A DNA stretch of 64,000 nt, from positions 1-64,000 of the IMG/VR virus record IMGVR_UViG_3300023174_005338, one strand, 5' to 3'. Shown one piece after another: positions 12,407 through 60,810 of the stretch. Position numbers and translations under genes: made by a program. A model generated the notes under the pieces. The model saw only the letters and a list, made by a program, of their open reading frames with translations. It was not told the DNA's origin and did not search any database. Positions within the stretch are counted from its first letter, which is position 1; each line of letters begins with the position of its first letter.

Positions 12407-13273
12407 ATGATCTTGACCATTGATCTCAGAGATTTGTCACTAAAATTTCGGGTATTGAAAACGCCCATAGCCCAATTATGGATTGAACGCATGAATCAGA
12501 GACATTCGTGGCCCATGGATGATCCCAAAAGATTTTACGGATTTAATACCCAAGAACAAGATGAACGAATTGCCTTGGCAAAGATACAGGAATGCATACA
12601 AGGAATTAATGCCTGGCAGCCGTTGATTACTAGATCGTTGTCTACAGTTTACGATCAAGATACATTAAACTATCTACACAACGTTTTTGAACAGTGGCAC
12701 GGTTTGTTAGATCAACATCCGATGCATCCAGAATATGGTCTTATACCTTCGGAAGTAAGACAACATTTGGCCAATTTAAATGTTGATGTTCACAGGTGCG
12801 AAAGTGCAGCACGTGGCAATCGCGCTAGATTTGTTTGCACTTGGTTTGGCATGCCCAAGACCAAAACGTTGCCGGTAGAAGTCATGCACAAATATGGAAC
12901 CTTAAATCCCAAGTTTGGTAGCGTGTGTTTGAACTATGCTGAGGTCGGCAAAACTCTGGAGGACCTCACACAAGATCGTGATAACTACATCAGTAACGAT
13001 GCGTTTTTACCGTTCAACCACTATTCAGCAGACTTCAATGTTCGCATGCACGAGGAAACTGCGGATTGTGTTGCTGACAAATTGGTCAGGATGCAGGCAT
13101 ACTACAACAAACACAGAGAGTTTTTCTTTGATCAAGGCTTTACCACATTCCAGGATCCTAGACTGTTGCCTTTGCGTTTTCCAGTGGCCGAACTCGTTGA
13201 AACTCAACCTAGAGATCAGTTAATAGAAACGATTAAGCAACATCAATACATCACACAAGTTACCCTACAATGA
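12407..13273 (+). CDS. Hypothetical protein, paralog of 1013..1834
   Basis: LNYLHNVFE, LNVDVHRCE, LNYAEVGKTLEDL, HYS. Confidence 0.7.
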   Translation: MILTIDLRDLSLKFRVLKTPIAQLWIERMNQRHSWPMDDPKRFYGFNTQEQDERIALAKIQECIQGINAWQPLITRSLSTVYDQDTLNYLHNVFEQWHGLLDQHPMHPEYGLIPSEVRQHLANLNVDVHRCESAARGNRARFVCTWFGMPKTKTLPVEVMHKYGTLNPKFGSVCLNYAEVGKTLEDLTQDRDNYISNDAFLPFNHYSADFNVRMHEETADCVADKLVRMQAYYNKHREFFFDQGFTTFQDPRLLPLRFPVAELVETQPRDQLIETIKQHQYITQVTLQ

Positions 13274-14730
13274 GAACAGCCACAATCGTAATCCGAGACG
13301 AAGTAAACATCAAGATCGAAGGACTTGAACTTGATGCTCGCCGTAGTTTAGTAAATGCTTTCAAATATGATGTTCCTGGTGCTAGATACTTACCTGCGGT
13401 CAGACTAGGACGTTGGGACGGCAAAGTCAGCTATTTCCAATTAGGTGGTAGCACCTATGTAAACTTGTTACCTGAGATTATTCCTATCCTGGAAAAGTTT
13501 AACTATGACGTTGAGCTAGATGATCAACGTGATTACTCTACCACGTTTACTTTTGAACAAGTAACCGAACAAACGTTCAGTCATATTGAGTGGGGCAAAG
13601 GGCATCCCCTAGAAGGTCAGCCAATGGAACTGCGTGATTACCAAGTTGACATCATCAACAATTTTCTTGAGAACCCACAGTGTATCCAGGAGATTGCCAC
13701 AGGTGCCGGCAAGACAGTTATTACAGCCGCATTATCAAATGCCGTGGCCCCCTATGGTCGAACCATTGTTATTGTTCCTAACAAAAGTCTTGTAACGCAG
13801 ACAGAAAAAGATTACATCAACATGCAACAGGATGTGGGGGTTTACTTTGGTGATAGAAAGGAGTGGGGTCGTCAACATACTATTTGCACTTGGCAAAGTT
13901 TGAATGTGCTGTTAAAGAATACAAAAAATAGTGTAGGCGATGTTACTATTGGTGAGTTCCTTGAGGATGTGGTGTGTGTGATTGTGGACGAAGTACACAT
14001 GGCCAAGGCCGACGCACTCAAGAGCCTGCTCACAGGTGTAATGAGTCGCATACCTTTGCGTTGGGGACTCACAGGAACCATACCTAAAGAACTCTTTGAG
14101 TCGCAGGCATTGAAGTGTAGTCTTGGTCCGGTAATAGGTCGACTCAGCGCCAGTGAACTACAAAGCCAAGGTGTGCTGGCACAATGTCATGTAAACATTG
14201 TTCAACTGGTTGATCATGCAGAGTTTACCAACTATCAAAGCGAACTAAAGTTCTTGCTAGAAGAACCAGATAGGTTAGATACTATTGCCAACTTGATCCG
14301 GCAGGTCAATGAGACCGGTAACACACTGGTCCTGGTTGATCGAATTGCAGCCGGACAGGGCATTATAGAACGCCTGGGTGACAATGCAGTCATGGTAAGT
14401 GGCGCAACCAAAGCCAAGGACAGACAAGATGAATATGATGAAGTGGCTGATGCAACAGGCAAGATCATCGTGGCCACGTATGGCGTGGCTGCGGTGGGTA
14501 TCAATATACCTAGGATTTTCAATCTGGTTCTTGTGGAACCTGGCAAGAGTTTTGTGCGAGTGATACAAAGCATAGGACGTGGTATTCGCAAGGCCGAAGA
14601 CAAAGACCATGTGCAGATTTGGGACGTTACATCAACCTGTAGATTTGCCAAACGGCACTTGACCAAACGCAAACAGTTCTACCGAGAAGCCAACTATCCT
14701 TTCACACAAGAGAAACTAGAATGGAAATAA
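13270..14730 (+). CDS. uvsW: UvsW superfamily 2 DNA helicase
   Basis: WDGK, LRDYQ, ATGAGKT, DEVH, GLTGT, QSIGRGIR. Confidence 0.93.
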   Translation: MRTATIVIRDEVNIKIEGLELDARRSLVNAFKYDVPGARYLPAVRLGRWDGKVSYFQLGGSTYVNLLPEIIPILEKFNYDVELDDQRDYSTTFTFEQVTEQTFSHIEWGKGHPLEGQPMELRDYQVDIINNFLENPQCIQEIATGAGKTVITAALSNAVAPYGRTIVIVPNKSLVTQTEKDYINMQQDVGVYFGDRKEWGRQHTICTWQSLNVLLKNTKNSVGDVTIGEFLEDVVCVIVDEVHMAKADALKSLLTGVMSRIPLRWGLTGTIPKELFESQALKCSLGPVIGRLSASELQSQGVLAQCHVNIVQLVDHAEFTNYQSELKFLLEEPDRLDTIANLIRQVNETGNTLVLVDRIAAGQGIIERLGDNAVMVSGATKAKDRQDEYDEVADATGKIIVATYGVAAVGINIPRIFNLVLVEPGKSFVRVIQSIGRGIRKAEDKDHVQIWDVTSTCRFAKRHLTKRKQFYREANYPFTQEKLEWK

Positions 14731-15268: not shown

Positions 15269-15714
15269 TGGACAAACTCAGTATACAAAATGAGATGACA
15301 CAGTTTGATAGAAAGAATCGAAAATTCTATGACGAACTCACCGACGAAGAACGTAAAAAGTTTAGTAACTATCTCATGATCCGCTGGGGCAGTGCTGTGC
15401 AAGGTTCGCAAGAACTGCAGGAGTTTTATTTGATTGCTACCAACGAAAGATTGAACAAACATTTCTTTGCTATCAATCGACATCCCCGATTGCAATGGTT
15501 ATCGGCTACCACAGTGAGTCCTGGTATGGGCTCACATAGACATCAGTGGATAGCTCCTAAGAAACGAGAAGCAGGAGCCACGGGTATTCGTAAACAGTTA
15601 TCAGAACTATACCCACATCTCAAGGATGATGAACTAGAGTTGATGGCCAAAATTACCACAAAGAAAGACATCGATGCTTATTTAAAAGCCGGTGGGCAAG
15701 AGGTCAAAAAATGA
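15268..15714 (+). CDS. Possible clamp-loader small subunit (gp62-like)
   Basis: Size, replication context, YLMIRWGS...N..LN...LQWL...QWI pattern. Confidence 0.45.
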   Translation: MDKLSIQNEMTQFDRKNRKFYDELTDEERKKFSNYLMIRWGSAVQGSQELQEFYLIATNERLNKHFFAINRHPRLQWLSATTVSPGMGSHRHQWIAPKKREAGATGIRKQLSELYPHLKDDELELMAKITTKKDIDAYLKAGGQEVKK

Positions 15715-16799
15715 TTAAGATTAATGCAACCCCAGACACATACGTTGCCAATTATATAATTTCACATCAACAATTACGAGACAATATACGACTTTATGAA
15801 ACTGGTGAAAATATTATCGATTTGCAGATTGGGCCCGGAGATATAGATTTTCATGATTCTGTTACTGGTGGTCCTCAGAACGATCTGTTACACCAGTGTG
15901 ATCAAGATATTGTTGCAGTATGGATTGAGGGTTTGCATTCGATCCTCGACGATATATCTATTTTTCCAAAAAATAAAAAATATATTTTTTTCTGCCCCTA
16001 TAGTTGGGATTGTGCCCTGTATCAGTTTCCATTCGAATATACAGTTGTAGAATGTAATTTTCACTGCTGGGATCGATTATTTTCGTATTTTAACCTTTAT
16101 AATTTCAATTTTTTTACTCCATTGCAGTATGAATTTGAGTCACCAAAACCCTATAAATTTTATGCACCTATAGGGGCGCGCCGTCCTGTAAGAAACATAT
16201 TTGTACAACATCTACTAGATAATATTGAGTTTGATGATTTTGTGCTTTCTTATCAAGGGCATAACCTAGGAAAAACTGATTATTATCGATTGGCAGTCGA
16301 AGACAGCAAAACCAACGGTCATTATGATTGTTTGAGCCCGTTTGCTGATTACGAAAAATACTATGTTGGGCTGGCCGAGCTGGTTCCAATAAAGACCATG
16401 AGTCAGGCTCGATTAACTTTGGTAGTAGAAACACAAATAAATTATTTAGGTAGTTTTTTTTACACTGAAAAAACAATGAAATGTATAGTGACCGGAACAC
16501 CTTTTGTGTGTTATGCAAACCAATATCATTTAAAAAATCTCAGAGAAAAAGTAGGGTTCCAAACCTATTCTTCACTGTGGGATGAATCATATGACAATAT
16601 CCAAGACCCCTACGAAAGATCTGTAGCCATAGTAAAGCTATTAAATCAACTACAAAATTTTGATTGGGAATCAGCCCGGCCGGAACTGTTGCGCATAGCT
16701 CAACATAACATGTACAATATATTTCAATTCCGAAACAAAGAACGGTCAATATTCATACAAAATTCAAACAATTTAAAAAAGTTTTTAGGTCGTGAGTGA
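15711..16799 (+). CDS. GT-B/GT10-like glycosyltransferase-like protein, paralog of 61405..62694
   Basis: LVVET..FYTEK...PF...GFQTY..WDESYD.I.D; AT-rich. Confidence 0.55.
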   Translation: MIKINATPDTYVANYIISHQQLRDNIRLYETGENIIDLQIGPGDIDFHDSVTGGPQNDLLHQCDQDIVAVWIEGLHSILDDISIFPKNKKYIFFCPYSWDCALYQFPFEYTVVECNFHCWDRLFSYFNLYNFNFFTPLQYEFESPKPYKFYAPIGARRPVRNIFVQHLLDNIEFDDFVLSYQGHNLGKTDYYRLAVEDSKTNGHYDCLSPFADYEKYYVGLAELVPIKTMSQARLTLVVETQINYLGSFFYTEKTMKCIVTGTPFVCYANQYHLKNLREKVGFQTYSSLWDESYDNIQDPYERSVAIVKLLNQLQNFDWESARPELLRIAQHNMYNIFQFRNKERSIFIQNSNNLKKFLGRE

Positions 16800-17475
16800 T
16801 TCCAAATATATCTGCCAGTATTGCAAGAAAGACTTTATCAAGGAGTCCAGTCTTGCGGTGCATTCATGCGAACCGCGTCGTCGTCGCATGGAAAAAGACG
16901 AAGCAGGTGTACGTTTAGGATTCCACGCATACCTAAGGTTTTATGAATTGACACAAGGTTCGGCAAAGTTAAAAACATTTGAAGACTTTGCCGATAGTCC
17001 GTACTACAAGGCCTTTGTAAAGTTTGGTAGGTACTGTGTGGACATCCGGGCTATAAATCCAGCACGGTTTGTTGAGTGGGTGTTGAAACAAAACAAGAAG
17101 ATTGATCACTGGGCCAAAGACACAGTGTATACAGAATATCTCATTGACTATCTGCGTGTGGAAAATGTCAACGATGCTCTGGCTCGGGCCATGGAGTTTG
17201 GCATAGACTGGTCAGAACAAAGTCAGCACCCAGCCGAAGATTGTCTGCGCTATGGCAACACCAATGCCATGGTCTATGCTGTAACTGCTGGCCGTGTCAG
17301 TCCTTGGATAGTGTATAACTGTGAATCAGGTCAGAAGTTTTTGAGTGAACTTGATGCTACACAAGTAGCCATGGTGTGGCCCTACATTGATAGTGAAGTG
17401 TGGATGAAAAAATTCTCAGACTATGTGGCTGATCAGGAATACGTCAAAGAGATGCTACAGAAAGCAGGTTGGTAA
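16792..17475 (+). CDS. Hypothetical protein with N-terminal zinc finger
   Basis: CQYC-x12-HSC. Confidence 0.7.
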   Translation: MSDSKYICQYCKKDFIKESSLAVHSCEPRRRRMEKDEAGVRLGFHAYLRFYELTQGSAKLKTFEDFADSPYYKAFVKFGRYCVDIRAINPARFVEWVLKQNKKIDHWAKDTVYTEYLIDYLRVENVNDALARAMEFGIDWSEQSQHPAEDCLRYGNTNAMVYAVTAGRVSPWIVYNCESGQKFLSELDATQVAMVWPYIDSEVWMKKFSDYVADQEYVKEMLQKAGW

Positions 17476-18053
17476 TGAGCGCAGACATTGATATTGACCT
17501 AGCCCATAGAGAACAATTATTAAAATTGATCCAAGCAACGCCAGCACGACAACTGTATCAAGGACAAGTGCGTAGACACAACAGCGGAGTATATCCAACT
17601 GACATGCCGTATGATCCTGTCAATGCCTGCGCGGCCATTGACTATGAAACCGCTGAACAGTTGGGATACTTCAAGATAGATCTACTCAACATGACAGTGT
17701 ATCAACTGATACAGGATCAAGCACATTATGATCGCATGCTGGTTGCTGATCCGCCATGGTCCAAATTGTGGACCGACAGTGAATGGGCCCAGCAACTAGT
17801 GCATGTGGGAAACTATACAGAATTGTTGAAAACCATGCGTCCTGACAGCATACCCAGGATGGCAGCATTTATCAGTATTATTCGTCCAGGCAAAACACAC
17901 TTGCAAAACCAACCCTGGGACCGGGTTTTTGCTTCAGTATGGGATGGCGACGACAGCCGCGGTTTTGTGTTCAAACAAAGCCATGCTGTCAGTTACGCAG
18001 CCTTGGTGGCCCTGCACATGAATCTACTCAACTCGTCGTACCAGAGTAATTGA
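17475..18053 (+). CDS. Miniature DnaE (Pol III alpha, family C)-like protein
   Basis: DIDID, HNSGV, GYFKIDLL, IIRPG, FKQSHAVSY match DnaE palm/finger motifs in only ~192 aa. Confidence 0.75.
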   Translation: MSADIDIDLAHREQLLKLIQATPARQLYQGQVRRHNSGVYPTDMPYDPVNACAAIDYETAEQLGYFKIDLLNMTVYQLIQDQAHYDRMLVADPPWSKLWTDSEWAQQLVHVGNYTELLKTMRPDSIPRMAAFISIIRPGKTHLQNQPWDRVFASVWDGDDSRGFVFKQSHAVSYAALVALHMNLLNSSYQSN

Positions 18054-18401
18054 TTTTCTCTTGCTTTTTTTGCGGCTTATTTCGCTGAGACTGCATATGG
18101 GCCCGTGTAGTATTTCCAGATCCTTGTTGGTAAAGGTGCGCAGATAAGGACGAAAAATGTCCCACTCGCCTTTTAAGAATATGTTGATAGGCACAGTTCT
18201 GTTGCTTTCCCACCACCACACATTGGCCAGTTCAAGGAATCTGCGTTTGATTTCTATGTCTTGGATCGCTCCAAAATCATAGATCGTGGTTATGGCATCG
18301 TCTTGATTTTGAATGATACCCACATATTCCGTGGTAGCATACACACACAAGGTGATAAACGGATATTTCTCCGCTAGTTGGGCAAAAAAGTCTGTGCTCA
18401 T
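18024..18401 (-). CDS. Conserved phage hypothetical protein
   Basis: 125-aa ORF; TAAATA on minus strand 10 nt upstream. Confidence 0.7.
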   Translation of the reverse strand: MSTDFFAQLAEKYPFITLCVYATTEYVGIIQNQDDAITTIYDFGAIQDIEIKRRFLELANVWWWESNRTVPINIFLKGEWDIFRPYLRTFTNKDLEILHGPICSLSEISRKKSKRKSITLVRRVE

Positions 18402-19655: not shown

Positions 19656-20660
19656 ATGATCGATGTGATTTCTTACTTGCCCGCACGACGCAAGCCCAGT
19701 GCTTCGGGTTGGATCAGTTTCAATGCACCCTGCTGTATACACAACAGTGAAAGTGCGGATCGTCGCAGTAGGGGTGGTATCAAAACTTCAGATGCAGGGT
19801 GGAGTTATCACTGTTTCAACTGTGGCTACACTGCTAGTTTTATCTTAGGTCGCAATCTCAGTTTCAAGGCACGCAAGCTGATGTCATGGTTGGGGGTACC
19901 AGCAGAAGAAATAGAACGCATCAACTTAGAAAGTCTACGCCATCGTAGCATGGAAGGTCTACTTTCTGATCGTCAAAGGTTGAGCAATACCTTGCAAGGC
20001 ATAGAGTTTGAAGAACGTGACCTGCCACCAGCTGCAGAACTGGTCACTACAAAACATAATCTGCACTGGAATTACTTGCGTGGCCGTGCCGTACCAGAAA
20101 GCTATCCTGTGATGACTGTGTTAGAAAATGACAGTGTGCATTGGACACGTCCACAGGTCATAGTGCCATTTACCTATGACGATCGCGTGGTAGGTTACAG
20201 TAGCCGCATGCTGGACAATCGTCAGCCTCGGTACATACATGACACACAGCCTGGCTATGTGTTTGGCACAGACTTACAAGGTGCTGACTGGCGTTATGCC
20301 ATAGTGGTTGAAGGTGTGTTTGATGCACTTGGCATTGGAGGCTTGGCTGTGTTGCATGCCGAGATCAATGACGCACAGGTCAGACTCATACGCAGTCTAG
20401 ATCGTGAAGTCATAGTGGTACCTGATCAAGACGCGGCAGGCATGAAGTTAGTAGACCGTGCAGTAGAACTAGGCTGGAGTGTAAGCATGCCTGCATGGCC
20501 CGCGGATGTCAAAGATGTCAATGATGCTGTGATTCGTTGGGGAAAGGTAGCAACTTTGATAACTATCATGCAGTCCAGAGAAACCAGTAAAATTAAAATA
20601 GAACTAAGGAAGAAAGCACTCTTAAAAAGACTTAAACAATCAAAGATTGTAACTTCTTAA
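19656..20660 (+). CDS. gp61: DNA primase (gp61-like)
   Basis: Zn finger (PCC...HCFNC), TOPRIM VEGVFDA, PDQD, KDVND. Confidence 0.88.
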
Positions 20661-21261
20661 GTCTCCATGTTTCTTTTTGTTTTTCAATTTGTTCTGCTGA
20701 CCTTTTTCTTCCTTTCAAGGCCGCACTTACTTTAGCATTCCATTCTTTTGAGTGTTCAACTTTTTTAAGTGCCATTCGTCTTTTCTCTATGGTGTCTTTA
20801 GTTTGTTTTAGACCTGTGTGTGATATGCTATTCTTTTTCCTACGTTCTAAACTATGTTTTACCCCAGTGAGAGATTTCTGGATTTTTTCTTTTGTTTTTG
20901 TTGTTCTTGTTTTACCGCGGTTTGAATTGGCTCTTTTCAATTTGGTTTCTGCAGATTGAATAGCACCAATTGACCCTTCTCCGCCATCGGTACGGTTATG
21001 AAGAATTCCTGTATTGTTATTTTGCCTTCCATACCATCTTATTAATTTTCGTTCCAAAATAAATGCACCTATTTCAAGCAAGTCATGAGAAATAATTATA
21101 ATACGACCAGGCGGTGGAGTATGCACACCCTGATTGTTTTGTCTGTGCTGAATCCAAGCTCGTGGGCCAGAACCTTTACCTATATAATATGGTGTTCCAG
21201 AATTGCGTAGGTAGGCATACACATAAAAGCTATTGGGTGGAGATAATTTTGTAAATATCAT
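20632..21261 (-). mobile_element. Free-standing GIY-YIG homing endonuclease with NUMOD3 repeats
   Basis: FYVYAY...YYIGKG..R, ERKLI, N.TDGGEG, repeated (H/Q)S.ET..K.S..KG; antisense, AT-rich, between primase and helicase; AAGGAG SD before ATG 21261. Confidence 0.88.
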
Positions 21262-21328
21262 TGCTGGTGCTCCTTTCAAGCATTAGAGTAGTTGGACATT
21301 GGCGTGTCGCGAACTACACCTTTATTTA
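21262..21328 (-). promoter_or_regulatory. Late promoter plus structured leader of the endonuclease gene
   Basis: TAAATA (21328-21323); GTAGTT/AACTAC and GACA/TGTC hairpin; TGCT/AGCA hairpin over the SD. Confidence 0.55.
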
Positions 21329-21389: not shown

Positions 21390-22787
21390 ATGATTACAGA
21401 TTATAATTTGGCAGTGCAACGTCTCTTTTTAGAGATGATGATTTCTGACGCAGAATTGTTCGTCAGAGTTCAAAATATTTACAATCCCGAAAACTTTGAT
21501 CGCAGTCTGCGACCGGTTGCAGAATTTTTGAAACAACATTGTAATGAATATAAAACACTACCTACGCCAGAACAAATAAATGCCGCAACAGGAATCAAAC
21601 TTGAGCCAATACTTGATCTAAATGAAGGTCACTGTGATTGGGCGTTAAACACATTCGAAGGATTTACTCGACGTCAAGAACTAGAGCGGGCAATCTTGAA
21701 GTCAGCAGACCTGCTGGAAAAAGGTGAGTATGATCCTGTGGAGAAGTTGATCAAGGATGCGGTACAGATCAGCTTGACCAAGGACATGGGCACAGACTAC
21801 TGGTCTGATCCCAAAGCTCGTATCAACAAATACTTTAATAGCGGTGGACAAGTTTCAACAGGTTGGCCACAGATGGACAAGATCTTGTATGGTGGATTCA
21901 GCAGAGGCGAACTCAACATTTTTGCAGGTGGATCAGGTTCTGGTAAATCCTTGGTCATGATGAACATTGCTTTGAGCTGGTTGCAGGCTGGCTTGTCGGG
22001 GGTGTATATCAGTTTGGAACTCAGTGAAGAACTGTGTGCCCTGAGAACTGATGCCATGTTGGCCGGAATGAGCACCAAAGAAATACGCAAGGACATTGAT
22101 CAGACCGAGCTCAAGGTCAAACTTGTGAGCAAGAAAGCCGGACAATATCGTATCAAGGCCCTGCCGGCGCAAAGCAACATCAATGACATACGAAGCTACA
22201 TCAAAGAAGTACAAGTGCAAACAGGATTGAAAGTGGACTTTGTCATGTGTGATTACTTGGACTTGTTGATGCCTGTGAGCGCCAAGGTCAGTCCCAATGA
22301 TCTGTTTGTCAAAGACAAGTATGTTTCAGAAGAACTGCGTAACTTGGCCAAAGAGCTCAATGTGTTGTTTGTGACAGCCAGCCAGTTGAATAGATCGGCC
22401 GTGGAAGAAATTGAGTTCGACCACAGTCATATTTCGGGCGGTATCTCAAAGATCAACACAGCAGACAATGTGTTTGGCATCTTTACCAGCCGAGCCATGC
22501 GTGAACGTGGCAAGTATCAGATACAGTGTATGAAAAGTCGTAGTAGCACAGGTGTAGGACAAAAGATTGACTTGGACTACAACATTGAAACCATGCGTAT
22601 CACTGATCCAGGTGAAGAAGCAGGGCCAGTTAACTCTTTCAAGAAACCTGATATTTTAACCAGCATCAAAACACAAAGTCGTATGACCACACCTGCAGAA
22701 GAAGAAATTGTAGAATCTGGCAAAATAACCGCTGATGTTCAGAGCGCAAAACTAAAACAGTTGTTGGGAAAGATAAAGACCACATGA
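21390..22787 (+). CDS. gp41: gp41/DnaB-like replicative helicase
   Basis: STGW, GGSGSGKS, SLELSE, DYLDL, TASQLNR, KSR. Confidence 0.93.
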   Translation: MITDYNLAVQRLFLEMMISDAELFVRVQNIYNPENFDRSLRPVAEFLKQHCNEYKTLPTPEQINAATGIKLEPILDLNEGHCDWALNTFEGFTRRQELERAILKSADLLEKGEYDPVEKLIKDAVQISLTKDMGTDYWSDPKARINKYFNSGGQVSTGWPQMDKILYGGFSRGELNIFAGGSGSGKSLVMMNIALSWLQAGLSGVYISLELSEELCALRTDAMLAGMSTKEIRKDIDQTELKVKLVSKKAGQYRIKALPAQSNINDIRSYIKEVQVQTGLKVDFVMCDYLDLLMPVSAKVSPNDLFVKDKYVSEELRNLAKELNVLFVTASQLNRSAVEEIEFDHSHISGGISKINTADNVFGIFTSRAMRERGKYQIQCMKSRSSTGVGQKIDLDYNIETMRITDPGEEAGPVNSFKKPDILTSIKTQSRMTTPAEEEIVESGKITADVQSAKLKQLLGKIKTT

Positions 22788-58794: not shown

Positions 58795-60810
58795 ATGCTG
58801 AAAAAAATCCTAACTAGCCCCTGGACTGCTCTAATAACATTGGCAGTTATAGTAGCAATACGCATAGCGGATCCTGCATTTGTAGAAAGTGTTCGCTTGC
58901 GTTATTTTGATACCTTGGTGACCAGCAAGCCCGCAGAAGTCACAGGTGTTCATGTTGTAAATATTGATGAAAAGGCTTTAGAACGATATGGTCAGTTTCC
59001 CTTCGCCAGAAATGTATATGCTGGCATCATCCAAGATCTTTATCGCCGCAACGCTGGTCTTGTTGTTTTTAATATTCTTACTCCTGATCGCGATCGCATG
59101 GGTCGCGATGCGGCGTATGTGGCGGCGTTGCAAAAACATGCTACGGTTCTTCCAAGCATAGGCAGCACAGCGACTCGTAACCAACCTAGGAATCCCGGAA
59201 GTGCGGTGATCGGTCCCCTGGATACTAACAATTTTGTGACCTATCCTGGAATCATTGCCAACATACCTGCTGTGGAACGTGCGGCCATAGGCGTAGGTAT
59301 CACTAACACCTTGCCCGAGATAGATGGTGTGGTACGTAGAATGCCCATGGTAGTGGCTGTTGATGGTAAGTTATATCCCAGTCTGGCCATGGAAGTCATG
59401 CGTGTGGCCGCAGGTGACTCGACTTTCCAAGTCAAAGTAAATGAACAGGGCGTGGAAAAAATGCGTATTCCACAGTTTGGCCCAGTGAGTACAGATAGCC
59501 TCAGCAGGATCTGGATTGACTGGAGCCTGACTCCAGAACGTCACGGCTTAACCGACTTGCCCCAGGACTTTGATGGCGAGATAGTTATTGTGGGAGTCAG
59601 TGCCGCAGGCCTGTCCAATCCTGTGGCCACCAGCCTGGGTGAGATGTTGCCACAAGACTTGCAAGCCGCTGTGATATCAACAGTGATAGCCAACAAGATC
59701 AGACCAGCTATTACTCGTCCTGACTGGGCAGATGGTGCAGAGATAATCACCTTGGTCGTGCTTGCGGTGACATTGATATTTTTAGGGAGATGGACCTATG
59801 TTGGTATTGCTGGCAGTGTTGTTGTCATTGGTATTTGTGTTTGGGTTCCTGGTGCTTTGTACTCGAGCCATGCTTGGCTCACTGACGTCACTTTGGTTGT
59901 TGGGGGTCTTGTTGCTGTGCTTCTGCATGCTTATGGAGTACGGTTTGTATCAGAGTATCTTGCTAAACAACAAATAAAGAAACAGTTTGGCACCTACTTG
60001 AGTCCGGCCATGGTCGAGAAACTTCAGAAGAATCCAGAACTGCTGAAGTTGGGCGGTGAAAGCAGAGAGTTGAGTATCATGTTCACTGATGTGCGTGGCT
60101 TTACTACCATCAGCGAACACTACGGTGCCGACGTTCAAGGACTGACCAAGATCATGAACAGATATATGACAGCCATGACCGCCAAAATCATAGAGAACGA
60201 AGGTACCTTGGACAAGTACATAGGTGATGCACAGATGGCATTTTGGAATGCACCCTTGGATGACGCTGATCATGCTGTCAATGCTGTGCGTACTGCTTTA
60301 CAAATGATGGAGAGTTTGGATGAGTTCAATCGTGAAATCAGTGCAGAAGGCATTCCGCCTTTTGGCATGGGCCTTGGCATCAATACTGGTACCGTGGTCG
60401 TTGGTAATATGGGCAGCGATCAGCGTTTTGATTACACCTGCCTTGGTGACAGCGTTAATCTGGCGAGCCGACTCGAAGGCCAGTCAAAACCTTATGGCGT
60501 TCGCATCATACTGGGACCGCGTACTAGTGAGCTTGTCAGAGATTCCTACCCAGTTGCGGAACTAGACTGCATAGCAGTAAAAGGCAAGACCGAAGGCGTC
60601 CGCATATATACACTGGCAGAAGAAACACAGTTGCACAAAGATTTTATCACCTTGTATTACGCTGGCGAATGGAAACAAGCACAGGCCTTGATTCCAGGAT
60701 GCATCAAAGCCTGCCCAGAACTGGAGGCATATTATGGGGCCATGGATGAACGACTTGCGGCAGGTAAGCCAGATGACTGGATGGGAACCTATAAGGCTAC
60801 ATCTAAATGA
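58795..60810 (+). CDS. CHASE2-domain class III adenylyl cyclase
   Basis: N-terminal TM; CHASE2 (VVNIDE..L..YGQFP..R, DGVVRR.P); three TMs; FTDVRGFT, DKYIGD, GINTG, DYT.LGD.VNLASRLE. Confidence 0.93.
   Translation: MLKKILTSPWTALITLAVIVAIRIADPAFVESVRLRYFDTLVTSKPAEVTGVHVVNIDEKALERYGQFPFARNVYAGIIQDLYRRNAGLVVFNILTPDRDRMGRDAAYVAALQKHATVLPSIGSTATRNQPRNPGSAVIGPLDTNNFVTYPGIIANIPAVERAAIGVGITNTLPEIDGVVRRMPMVVAVDGKLYPSLAMEVMRVAAGDSTFQVKVNEQGVEKMRIPQFGPVSTDSLSRIWIDWSLTPERHGLTDLPQDFDGEIVIVGVSAAGLSNPVATSLGEMLPQDLQAAVISTVIANKIRPAITRPDWADGAEIITLVVLAVTLIFLGRWTYVGIAGSVVVIGICVWVPGALYSSHAWLTDVTLVVGGLVAVLLHAYGVRFVSEYLAKQQIKKQFGTYLSPAMVEKLQKNPELLKLGGESRELSIMFTDVRGFTTISEHYGADVQGLTKIMNRYMTAMTAKIIENEGTLDKYIGDAQMAFWNAPLDDADHAVNAVRTALQMMESLDEFNREISAEGIPPFGMGLGINTGTVVVGNMGSDQRFDYTCLGDSVNLASRLEGQSKPYGVRIILGPRTSELVRDSYPVAELDCIAVKGKTEGVRIYTLAEETQLHKDFITLYYAGEWKQAQALIPGCIKACPELEAYYGAMDERLAAGKPDDWMGTYKATSK

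What the first reader, a model, noticed from the sequence alone, without database searches (positions are those of the whole stretch)
17475..18053. Miniature family-C polymerase retaining all three catalytic aspartates
About 192 aa carry DIDID, H..GV, K.D.L, RPG and F..SHA..Y, i.e. the DnaE palm/finger landmarks, but no PHP, clamp-binding or OB domains. It is intact and coupled to the upstream Zn-finger gene within a T4-like replisome cluster, where family-B polymerases are the norm. It could be a minimal nucleotidyltransferase, one part of a split enzyme (with 14768/15268/16792), or a host Pol III decoy.
Basis: partly seen in the sequence, partly recalled or inferred. Interest (0 to 1): 0.65.

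Follow-up and report, generated by a model that had tools for sequence, protein, structure and literature searches.

The report
Half of a split mini Pol III
This intact 192-residue gene of a freshwater jumbo phage is the metal-binding half of a tiny bacterial-type (family C) DNA polymerase whose nucleotide-binding half is encoded about 100 kb away; the two-gene enzyme was predicted in 2021 but I found no experimental work on it.

Summary
ORF 17475..18053 (+) is intact, 192 aa, and carries DIDID, H..GV, K.D.L, RPG and F..SHA..Y in DnaE order. These motifs are invariant in 80/80 metagenomic relatives and in cultured jumbo phages at 33-38% identity; median dN/dS is 0.11.

It is not a whole polymerase. 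It starts exactly at the DxD strand and lacks the GS (NTP-binding) half of the Pol-beta-like palm. That half is a separate 170-aa gene at genome position 117086-117598, about 100 kb away. It ends right after ...GVGRGS...EFL(K/R), where DnaE would continue with PDIDIDF.

- Both halves occur once each in PA5oct, Atu_ph07, PBECO4, Phosso and a Vibrio jumbo phage, always apart.
- A complex model docks them: ipSAE 0.90, best control 0.39.
- Each half's fold matches the adjoining DnaE segments.

This is the "split minimal DNA polymerase III alpha" of group 2.2 jumbo phages (Iyer et al. 2021, PMC7824862), which coexists with a family B polymerase. The window therefore holds a new member of a known, computationally described family. 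I found no experimental characterisation. The same genome also encodes a 557-aa single-chain DnaE-like protein without a PHP domain.

The parts
17475..18053 (+). C-terminal unit of the split minimal family C (Pol III alpha-like) polymerase, 192 aa. It carries the metal-binding Asp residues (D4, D6, D69), the HxxG palm strand, and a shortened fingers region with RPG and KxSH..Y.
   Evidence: ORF and motifs; phrog_11778 E 2e-49, phrog_405 E 4.9e-6; collinear with DnaE; Z 8.8 to 2hnh residues 559-784; invariant residues; dN/dS 0.11; docks on the N-unit encoded at genome 117086-117598, outside the window.
16792..17475 (+). Context only: upstream 227-aa protein with an N-terminal C2H2-like Zn-finger motif (phrog_11058, function unknown). 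Its stop overlaps the C-unit start (TAATG). Not shown to be part of the enzyme.
   Evidence: It lies upstream of the C-unit in 58/58 relatives, but abuts it in only 21/58; the others have 0.34-2.7 kb inserted between the two genes. It has no DnaE-related family hit.
18024..18401 (-). Context only: convergent 125-aa ORF (phrog_11637, function unknown) whose 3' end overlaps the C-unit's 3' end by 30 nt.
   Evidence: The same convergent gene is present in PA5oct, Atu_ph07, PBECO4, Phosso, XaC1 and the Vibrio phage, overlapping the C-unit in all but the Vibrio phage, where it starts 7 nt downstream. In most IMG/VR relatives the overlap is 17-30 nt.
13270..14730 (+). Context: UvsW-like SF2 DNA helicase at the head of the conserved gene block.
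   Evidence: ResIII, Helicase_C, UvsW_N; phrog_16; synteny.
19656..20660 (+). Context: Toprim DNA primase, two genes downstream of the C-unit.
   Evidence: Toprim_2; phrog_47 E 9e-29; same position.
21390..22787 (+). Context: DnaB-like replicative helicase.
   Evidence: DnaB_C, E 3.8e-21.

Best explanation
The ORF encodes the C-terminal subunit of a two-gene, minimal family C (DnaE-like) nucleotidyltransferase, typical of T4-related 'group 2.2' jumbo phages.

The Pol-beta-like palm is cut between its first and second core elements:
- A separately encoded ~170-aa N-unit (genome 117086-117598, ~100 kb away) supplies the helices and the strand-loop with the GxGRGS NTP-binding motif. It ends right after EFL(K/R).
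- This C-unit starts with the DxDxD strand (two catalytic Asp). It continues without any thumb domain to the HxxG strand and the KxDxL strand (third catalytic Asp), and ends with a shortened fingers region that keeps the RPG and KxSH..Y motifs.

Inferred mechanism: the two proteins assemble non-covalently. The C-unit's DIDID strand pairs with the N-unit's WGVGRGS strand to rebuild one active site. The heterodimer then catalyses templated dNTP addition as a distributive auxiliary polymerase, without clamp or proofreading, beside the phage's family B replicase. Its conserved position next to the primase and DnaB genes suggests a primer-extension, gap-filling or repair role.

Shown here: homology, the conserved split site, co-occurrence of the two halves, purifying selection and the in-silico docking. 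Inferred: actual binding, catalysis and the biological role.
For: 1. C-unit homology to family C: phrog_11778 E 2e-49 and phrog_405 E 4.9e-6. PDB profile hits are DnaE only and collinear: DIDID at Mtb DnaE1 413-424, KxDxL near 575, RPG near 665, KSH near 780. VIA Z 8.8 over model 69-192 against E. coli 559-784; the top 10 are all family C and the next chain scores 3.2.

2. N-unit. PF07733 scores 27.8 bits, above its 23.9 cut-off, over profile positions 29-94/260. phrog_11127 matches at E 4e-40, and seven NCBIfam DnaE models hit profile positions ~320-390. Its model's seven best matches among 48,161 chains are all family C: 5lew Z 7.2, rmsd 3.2 A over 88 aligned residues, model 71-170 against Mtb 307-407, which lies directly before the PDIDIDF that the C-unit matches; the next chain scores 3.1.

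3. The split site is fixed. All six N-units end at ...DSL.Y.LD..EFL followed by one to three further residues (one in four of the six), and all six C-units start M-x(2-15)-DIDID. In IMG/VR, 79/80 N-unit ORFs stop 35 residues after GxGRGS. All 80 C-unit ORFs are intact; the 79 with a recognised start measure 183-198 aa, 75 of them opening MSADxDxD.

4. Co-occurrence: both units occur once each in 5/5 cultured jumbo phages, 30-224 kb apart. tblastn finds 96 and 99 phage records with the same genus distribution. Three IMG/VR contigs carry both units ~95-108 kb apart.

5. Docking: ipSAE 0.90/0.90/0.91 against a best control of 0.39. That mark was reached by 58 of 80 solved complexes and 2 of 110 mismatched pairs; these counts hold only roughly here because my own alignments were used. 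The runs agree in at least 96% of contacts, and pLDDT is at least 89 for the N-unit (the scored partner) and 91 for the C-unit. C-unit residues 2-10 touch N-unit residues 131-144, the GRGS strand. Folded alone, both halves are poorly modelled at exactly these parts.

6. Selection: D4, D6, D8, H35, G38, K67, D69, R137, P138, G139, K167, H170 and Y174 are invariant in 80/80. Median dN/dS is 0.106, maximum 0.19, over 197 pairs.

7. The genome has a family B polymerase (889-aa frame at 163 kb) and no PHP domain. This matches the description in Iyer et al. 2021 (PMC7824862).
Against: - No biochemical evidence exists for binding or activity. I found none in the searchable literature.
- The docking pass may reflect the model's memory of single-chain DnaE palms. 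It shows complementarity of shape, not binding.
- There is no thumb, clamp-binding, OB or exonuclease part, so stable primer-template binding is not explained.
- Sequence-level matches of the C-unit to Pfam and PDB are below curated or significance thresholds (PF17657 11.6 bits against 22; PDB E 0.036). Foldseek alone gave E 0.28.
- The two genes sit in different genome modules, so stoichiometric co-expression is unproven.
- At the position equivalent to E. coli K758, this copy has Q168, where 66 of the 80 sequences in the set (this copy and 79 relatives) have K.
Confidence: 0.8

Rival explanations
1. The N+C heterodimer forms, but it is a nucleotidyltransferase with another job than templated DNA synthesis. 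Candidates are untemplated tailing, priming-like synthesis or nucleotide-signal synthesis. It would use the Pol-beta-like active site without the DNA-holding parts of DnaE.
For: There is no thumb, clamp-binding or OB domain. Only ~60 residues separate the DxD motif from the third Asp, against ~150 in E. coli. The fingers are cut to about half (model 69-192 against E. coli 559-784, with ~100 residues missing between RPG and KSH). Pol-beta-fold enzymes include many non-polymerase transferases (general knowledge).
Against: The retained fingers motifs (RPG, KxSH..Y) are specific to family C polymerases and invariant. The gene always sits in the helicase-primase-DnaB block. The closest folds are exclusively replicative family C polymerases.
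Confidence: 0.12
2. This is a catalytically idle protein: a decoy or adaptor that binds host Pol III partners or phage replisome proteins.
For: It is small, and accessory domains are missing. The phage already has a family B replicase and, in this lineage, a 557-aa single-chain DnaE-like enzyme as well.
Against: All three metal-binding Asp residues and the fingers motifs are invariant in 80/80 relatives and across cultured phages at 33-38% identity. The regions through which DnaE binds the clamp, tau and epsilon (PHP, beta-binding and C-terminal domains) are absent. The C-terminal tail varies in sequence and length. A matching NTP-binding half is maintained in every genome checked.
Confidence: 0.05
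3. This is a stand-alone miniature polymerase, or a split enzyme completed by the adjacent genes 14768, 15268 or 16792. These are the first reader's other options.
For: The gene is translationally coupled to 16792 in this window (TAATG), and the gene order is conserved.
Against: The protein lacks the GS/NTP-binding element of the fold and models as disordered over residues 1-68 when alone. The three neighbours have no DnaE-related hit in Pfam or PHROGs. The exact missing piece is found elsewhere in the genome. Abutment to the Zn-finger gene holds in only 21/58 relatives, and several cultured phages have an extra ORF between the two genes.
Confidence: 0.03

Closest known systems
Split minimal DNA polymerase III alpha of group 2.2 jumbo phages (Iyer, Anantharaman, Krishnan, Burroughs & Aravind 2021, Viruses 13:63, PMC7824862); PHROG families phrog_11778 (C-unit) and phrog_11127 (N-unit)
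   Same: - Two distantly located genes: an N-terminal NTP-binding unit and a C-terminal unit that binds Mg and template.
- No other Pol III domains in either unit.
- Coexistence with a family B polymerase in a T4-related jumbo genome.
- Full-length profile matches.
- Orthologues in PA5oct, Atu_ph07, PBECO4, CBB and RaK2.
   Different: Nothing essential: this is an orthologue from an uncultured freshwater phage, at most 38% identical to cultured members. Unlike the paper's generalisation, this genome also carries a further single-chain DnaE-like gene with palm and fingers.
Bacterial DnaE / Pol III alpha (E. coli 2HNH, T. aquaticus 2HPI/3E0D, M. tuberculosis 5LEW) and PolC
   Same: The Pol-beta-like palm has the same DxD...D metal ligands, the HxxG strand, and the RPG and KSH..Y fingers motifs in the same order. 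The fold matches are Z 8.8 for the C-unit and Z 7.2-7.4 for the N-unit.
   Different: About 360 residues in two chains, against 1,000-1,400 in one. There is no PHP, thumb, beta-binding, OB or tau-binding domain, and the fingers lack ~100 residues. The sequence falls below the curated Pfam and NCBIfam cut-offs.
Compact single-chain phage DnaE-like polymerases without PHP (phrog_405 / phrog_11165; e.g. Streptomyces phage 'DnaE-like DNA polymerase III alpha'), including the 557-aa paralogue in this genome
   Same: Both are reduced family C enzymes of phages. The N-unit aligns to residues 3-92 of the paralogue and the C-unit to residues ~100-300.
   Different: Those are one chain, pass PF07733 and PF17657 (E 1.5e-38 and 1.9e-14), and keep long inserts between the catalytic strands plus a C-terminal extension. 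The split pair shares only ~25% identity with the paralogue over short stretches.
Intein-split DnaE of cyanobacteria (trans-splicing)
   Same: A family C polymerase encoded by two distant genes.
   Different: There is no intein here. The N-unit stops 35 residues after GxGRGS, and the C-unit has only 3 residues before DIDID. That leaves no room for intein halves, so any assembly must be non-covalent.

Membership tests
Split minimal Pol III alpha of group 2.2 jumbo phages, C-terminal unit | Full-length similarity to the phage-specific ~190-aa family | tested here: met
   phrog_11778 E 2e-49, residues 3-188 against profile 7-194/197. 96 phage records match; all listed are jumbo genomes apart from one unannotated 94-kb record, at 33-38% identity over at least 95% of the length.
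Split minimal Pol III alpha of group 2.2 jumbo phages, C-terminal unit | Mg-chelating acidic residues of the Pol-beta-like palm retained | tested here: met
   D4, D6 (and D8) and D69 are invariant in the cultured-phage alignments and in 80/80 IMG/VR relatives. They are collinear with the DnaE PDIDIDF and KMDFLG motifs.
Split minimal Pol III alpha of group 2.2 jumbo phages, C-terminal unit | A separate, distantly encoded N-terminal NTP-binding unit in the same genome | tested here: met
   Genome 117086-117598 (+). PF07733 27.8 bits, above the cut-off; phrog_11127 E 4e-40. It lies ~100 kb from the C-unit. Both units are present in 5/5 cultured relatives.
Split minimal Pol III alpha of group 2.2 jumbo phages, C-terminal unit | Host genome is a T4-related jumbo phage with its own family B polymerase and no other Pol III domains | tested here: inconclusive
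   The record is a 337,119-bp virus genome with terminal repeats. PF00136 matches at E 4.9e-32 in an 889-aa frame, and there is no PHP. However, a further 557-aa protein with Pol III palm and fingers domains is present, which departs from the published generalisation.
Split minimal Pol III alpha of group 2.2 jumbo phages, C-terminal unit | The two units are predicted to rebuild one nucleotidyltransferase domain | tested here: met
   In silico only. ipSAE 0.90 against a best control of 0.39 (mark reached by 58/80 solved complexes and 2/110 mismatched pairs; counts rough because own alignments were used). At least 96% of contacts agree between runs; pLDDT is at least 89 for the N-unit and 91 for the C-unit. 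The DIDID strand contacts the GRGS strand. Physical binding is not testable here.
Bacterial DnaE/PolC (family C replicative polymerase) | Complete palm domain in one chain (Pfam PF07733 at or above its cut-off) | tested here: not met
   The C-unit has no PF07733 hit. The profile's positions 29-94 are in the other gene.
Bacterial DnaE/PolC (family C replicative polymerase) | Fingers domain (PF17657 at or above its cut-off) | tested here: not met
   11.6 bits against a cut-off of 22. The fold matches E. coli 559-784 at Z 8.8, but ~100 residues between RPG and KSH are missing.
Bacterial DnaE/PolC (family C replicative polymerase) | N-terminal PHP domain | tested here: not met
   The protein starts at the DxD motif. 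PF02811 is absent from the whole genome, while the control rings in 14/14 genomes.
Bacterial DnaE/PolC (family C replicative polymerase) | Thumb domain between the DxD motif and the third Asp | tested here: not met
   61 residues lie between D8 and D69, against ~150 between E. coli D405 and D555. Alignments skip the thumb region.
Bacterial DnaE/PolC (family C replicative polymerase) | Clamp-binding, OB and tau-binding C-terminal parts | tested here: not met
   The protein ends at the equivalent of E. coli ~784. The tail after residue ~184 varies in sequence and length.
Bacterial DnaE/PolC (family C replicative polymerase) | Template-directed DNA polymerase activity | not testable with these tools
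   Needs biochemistry.

The most novel reading that the evidence does not exclude
The non-covalent N+C pair is a working DNA polymerase of only ~360 residues, with no thumb, clamp or exonuclease. That would make it the smallest family C enzyme known. It would act with the adjacent primase and DnaB as a primer-extension or hand-off polymerase for the phage's family B replicase, a bacterial-type analogue of the Pol alpha role. It would show either what the ancestral Pol III core looked like or how far such a core can be reduced.
Probability: 0.3. Interest if true: 0.75.

Novelty: new member of a known kind. Interest (0 to 1): 0.4.

Why it matters
If the pair is active, it defines the minimal catalytic core of family C polymerases and gives a natural example of an active site shared between two polypeptides. 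It would also show a phage replisome that mixes bacterial-type and archaeo-eukaryotic-type polymerases. The family is abundant: more than 6,400 database relatives and hundreds of IMG/VR contigs. It is strongly constrained, and I found no experimental work on it. Cultured members (PA5oct, PBECO4, RaK2, Atu_ph07) make direct tests easy. As a discovery, though, the family and its split nature were already published in 2021, so this window adds an orthologue and some detail rather than a new kind of system.

Tried and rejected
- **Neighbours as partners.** ORFs 14768, 15268, 15711 and 16792 gave no DnaE-related hit in Pfam or PHROGs. The Atlas feature search of the Zn-finger protein returned only unnamed viral clusters.
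- **Split intein.** Rejected: there is no room for intein halves at either end.
- **Fused single-chain versions.** None among the 80 closest C-unit loci or the 80 N-unit loci. Not searched exhaustively: the word search cannot see proteins longer than 1.75x the query, and I did not run the big representative search, which the operators flagged as costly and which the claim does not need.
- **megablast of 13-22 kb against phages.** No match; the phage has no close cultured relative.
- **Foldseek alone.** Its best seven rows were DnaE chains, but at E 0.28-0.68, not significant. VIA-align on the same model gave the clear result.
- **hhalign of the shallow unit alignments against the 557-aa paralogue family.** Sensible tiling but low probabilities: 2% and 35%.
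- I removed those rows and did not send them to any other remote fold tool.
- **Expression.** No run that holds the stretch is on record as RNA. The PA5oct omics paper gives no statement on these genes.
Full report
**What is there.** Window 17475..18053 (+) is an intact 192-codon ORF. Its ATG overlaps the stop of the upstream gene (TAATG).

Pfam sees only a sub-threshold fingers match: PF17657, 11.6 bits against a cut-off of 22. PHROGs places it full-length in phrog_11778 'DNA polymerase' (E 2e-49) and, more weakly, in the DnaE-sized phrog_405 (E 4.9e-6). A profile of the family finds only Pol III alpha chains in the PDB. The hits are weak (E 0.036-0.15) but cover four collinear segments:
- DIDID against M. 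tuberculosis DnaE1 413-424 (MPDIDIDF);
- KxDxL against LLKMDFLG near 575;
- RPG against ALYRPGP near 665;
- KxSH..Y against FNKSHAAGY near 780.

By register, D4, D6 and D69 correspond to E. coli D401, D403 and D555. That those three are the catalytic residues is my own knowledge of the DnaE literature. The correspondence is my own register, read from the two alignments.

**Genome and context.** The window is bases 1-64000 of a 337,119-bp virus record with direct terminal repeats. Near-identical DNA occurs in lake and freshwater metagenomes. It has no close cultured relative.

The gene lies in a block that runs: UvsW-like helicase, several small ORFs, a 227-aa Zn-finger protein (phrog_11058), this gene, a convergent small ORF (phrog_11637), a virion protein, the primase, then DnaB. 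The same order is found in Pseudomonas phage PA5oct, Agrobacterium phage Atu_ph07, Escherichia phage PBECO4, Sinorhizobium phage Phosso, Xanthomonas phage XaC1 and a Vibrio jumbo phage. The genome encodes a family B polymerase elsewhere (889-aa frame near 163 kb) and no PHP domain.

**It is half an enzyme.** The protein begins three residues before the DxD strand, so it lacks the preceding GS/NTP-binding element of the Pol-beta-like fold.

A search of the phage's own genome with PF07733 found the missing piece at 117395-117595 (+). This ORF most likely starts at the Met conserved in all relatives, giving 170 aa at genome 117086-117598. It ends ...WGVGRGSSVAS...DSLYYNLDISEFLR-stop. In DnaE this stretch runs straight on into PDIDIDF.

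Evidence that it is the N-terminal half:
- PF07733 scores above its cut-off (27.8 against 23.9 bits; profile positions 29-94 of 260).
- phrog_11127 'DNA polymerase' matches at E 4e-40.
- Seven NCBIfam DnaE models hit at profile positions ~320-390.
- In an unbiased comparison with 48,161 PDB chains, the seven best matches of its model are all family C polymerases. Examples are 9qpc_A (Z 7.4, rmsd 3.0 A, 85 aligned) and 5lew (Z 7.2, rmsd 3.2 A, 88 aligned, model 71-170 against Mtb 307-407). The next chain scores Z 3.1.

For the C-unit model, the ten best VIA-align rows are all family C. The best is 2hnh: Z 8.8, rmsd 3.4 A, 117 aligned residues, model 69-192 against E. coli 559-784. The next chain scores Z 3.2. 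The two proteins therefore tile onto adjoining parts of DnaE: the N-unit onto Mtb ~307-407 and the C-unit from ~413 onward.

**The split is ancient and fixed.** All six N-units examined (this phage and five cultured ones) end at the EFL motif, followed by one to three further residues (one in four of the six). All six C-units start M-x(2-15)-DIDID.

| Measure | N-unit | C-unit |
|---|---|---|
| IMG/VR ORFs | 79/80 stop exactly 35 residues after GxGRGS | 80/80 intact; the 79 with a recognised start are 183-198 aa, 75 of them opening MSADxDxD |
| Cultured jumbo phages | once each in 5/5 | once each in 5/5, 30-224 kb from the N-unit |
| tblastn phage records | 99 | 96, same genus distribution |

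Three large IMG/VR contigs carry both units ~95-108 kb apart. There is no room for intein halves, so any assembly is non-covalent.

**Constraint.** D4, D6, D8, H35, G38, P45, D47, K67, D69, L71, R137, P138, G139, K140, F166, K167, H170 and Y174 are invariant in 80/80 sequences. Most are also invariant against cultured phages at 33-38% identity. Pairwise dN/dS over 197 pairs with usable dS has a median of 0.106 and a maximum of 0.19. The word search returned 6,423 relatives at E<=1e-3; the 120 listed are 186-197 aa long.

**Docking test.** I modelled the N-unit (170 aa) with the C-unit (192 aa), using my own 18-row alignments.
- ipSAE was 0.90/0.90/0.91 against a best control of 0.39.
- That mark was reached by 58 of 80 solved complexes and 2 of 110 mismatched pairs. 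These counts hold only roughly here because my own alignments were used.
- The runs agree in at least 96% of contacts. pLDDT is at least 89 for the N-unit, the scored partner, and 91 for the C-unit.
- The tightest contacts put C-unit residues 7-9 (the DIDID strand) against N-unit W135/G136 (the strand before GRGS). This is what the Pol-beta-like fold requires.
- Folded alone, C-unit residues 1-68 fall below pLDDT 50, and N-unit residues ~131-170 average 54-69.

The model supports binding but does not show it. Because single-chain DnaE palms are solved, the pass may partly be memory of that fold.

**What is missing.**
- Only 61 residues separate D8 from D69, against ~150 in E. coli. The thumb is absent.
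- About 100 residues between RPG and KSH are missing, so the fingers are roughly halved.
- The chain ends at the equivalent of E. coli ~784, so there is no clamp-binding, OB or tau-binding part.
- The tail beyond residue ~184 varies.
- At the position of E. coli K758 this copy has Q168; across the 80 sequences in the set the counts are K 66, H 9, Q 4 (this copy among them) and R 1.

ORFs 14768, 15268 and 16792 have no polymerase-related hits. The Zn-finger gene is always upstream (58/58 relatives) but abuts the C-unit in only 21. In the other 37, 0.34-2.7 kb of other ORFs are inserted, and several cultured phages have an extra small ORF there. The coupling seen in this window is ordinary operon packing, not a conserved link.

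**Comparison with the literature.** Iyer et al. [quoted passage not shown] They suggested that it cooperates with the family B enzyme in synthesis of one strand or in repair.

The present gene is an orthologue of their C-terminal unit. I found no experimental follow-up in the searchable library, which does not cover all journals.

**Verdict.** The most likely mechanism is a non-covalent N+C heterodimer that rebuilds one Pol-beta-like active site and acts as a distributive auxiliary DNA polymerase beside the family B replicase. Homology, the split site, co-occurrence and selection are shown. Assembly is supported in silico. Catalysis and role are inferred. In novelty terms it is a new member of a known, computationally described family.

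**Beyond the finding.** The same genome also encodes a 557-aa single-chain DnaE-like protein without PHP, at genome 93749-95422 (-).
- It matches PF07733 at E 1.5e-38 and PF17657 at E 1.9e-14.
- Its best NCBIfam model is DnaE2-type 'error-prone DNA polymerase', far below that model's cut-off.
- It is absent from the five cultured relatives.
- It is present in at least 124 IMG/VR contigs at 75-94% identity, and at 36% identity in a 484-kb uncultured phage.

This lineage thus carries three polymerase systems, a point not covered by the 2021 description.

Noticed in passing
outside the window: own genome G000:C1:93749-95422 (-) = L001:517-2190 (-): A 557-aa single-chain DnaE-like polymerase without a PHP domain (GSAGSS, PDIDLDF, FKIDIL, IRP and RAHA motifs; PF07733 E 1.5e-38, PF17657 E 1.9e-14; best NCBIfam model DnaE2-type, far below its cut-off). 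It coexists with the split mini Pol III and a family B polymerase. It is absent from PA5oct, Atu_ph07, PBECO4, Phosso and the Vibrio phage, but present in at least 124 IMG/VR contigs. Its last ~130 residues are unassigned.
   Followed up: partly
window 17472-17478 (junction of 16792..17475 and 17475..18053) and the same place in L011-L090: The gap between the Zn-finger gene and the C-unit is an insertion hot spot. The two genes abut in 21 of 58 relatives. The others have inserts in recurrent size classes (~350, ~720, ~950 and 1,100-2,700 bp) that carry unrelated ORFs.
   Followed up: partly
window 18024-18401 (-): A convergent 125-aa ORF (phrog_11637, function unknown) overlaps the C-unit's 3' end by 30 nt. 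The convergent overlap (mostly 17-30 nt) is conserved in IMG/VR relatives and in most of the cultured jumbo phages. This suggests a constrained shared terminator or antisense relationship.
   Followed up: partly
window 20632-21279 (-): A 215-aa homing-endonuclease-like ORF (phrog_314, E 4e-10; a GIY-YIG-like YVYAY...YYIGKG motif by eye, with no Pfam hit) sits on the opposite strand between the primase and DnaB genes. In PA5oct, PBECO4 and XaC1 those two genes are adjacent.
   Followed up: partly
window 58795-60810 (+): A 671-aa protein with a CHASE2 sensor domain (E 1.5e-35) and an adenylate/guanylate cyclase catalytic domain (E 2.1e-21), encoded by a phage genome.
   Followed up: no
window 15711-16799 (+): A 362-aa ORF inside the conserved replication block with no Pfam or PHROG family. 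It sits where the cultured relatives have shorter or different genes.
   Followed up: no
outside the window: own genome ~117086-117598 (+) = L002:1192-1704: The N-unit evolves faster than the C-unit: the best IMG/VR identity is 69% against 87%. It also has an extra N-terminal ~70-residue alpha/beta part with no structural match. It lies next to a GroES/gp31-like co-chaperonin gene rather than replication genes.
   Followed up: partly
window 17976-17978 (codon 168 of the C-unit): This copy has Gln at the position aligned with E. coli DnaE K758 in the FNKSH motif. Across the 80 sequences in the set (this copy and 79 relatives) the counts are Lys 66, His 9, Gln 4 and Arg 1. The neighbouring K167 is invariant.
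   Followed up: no
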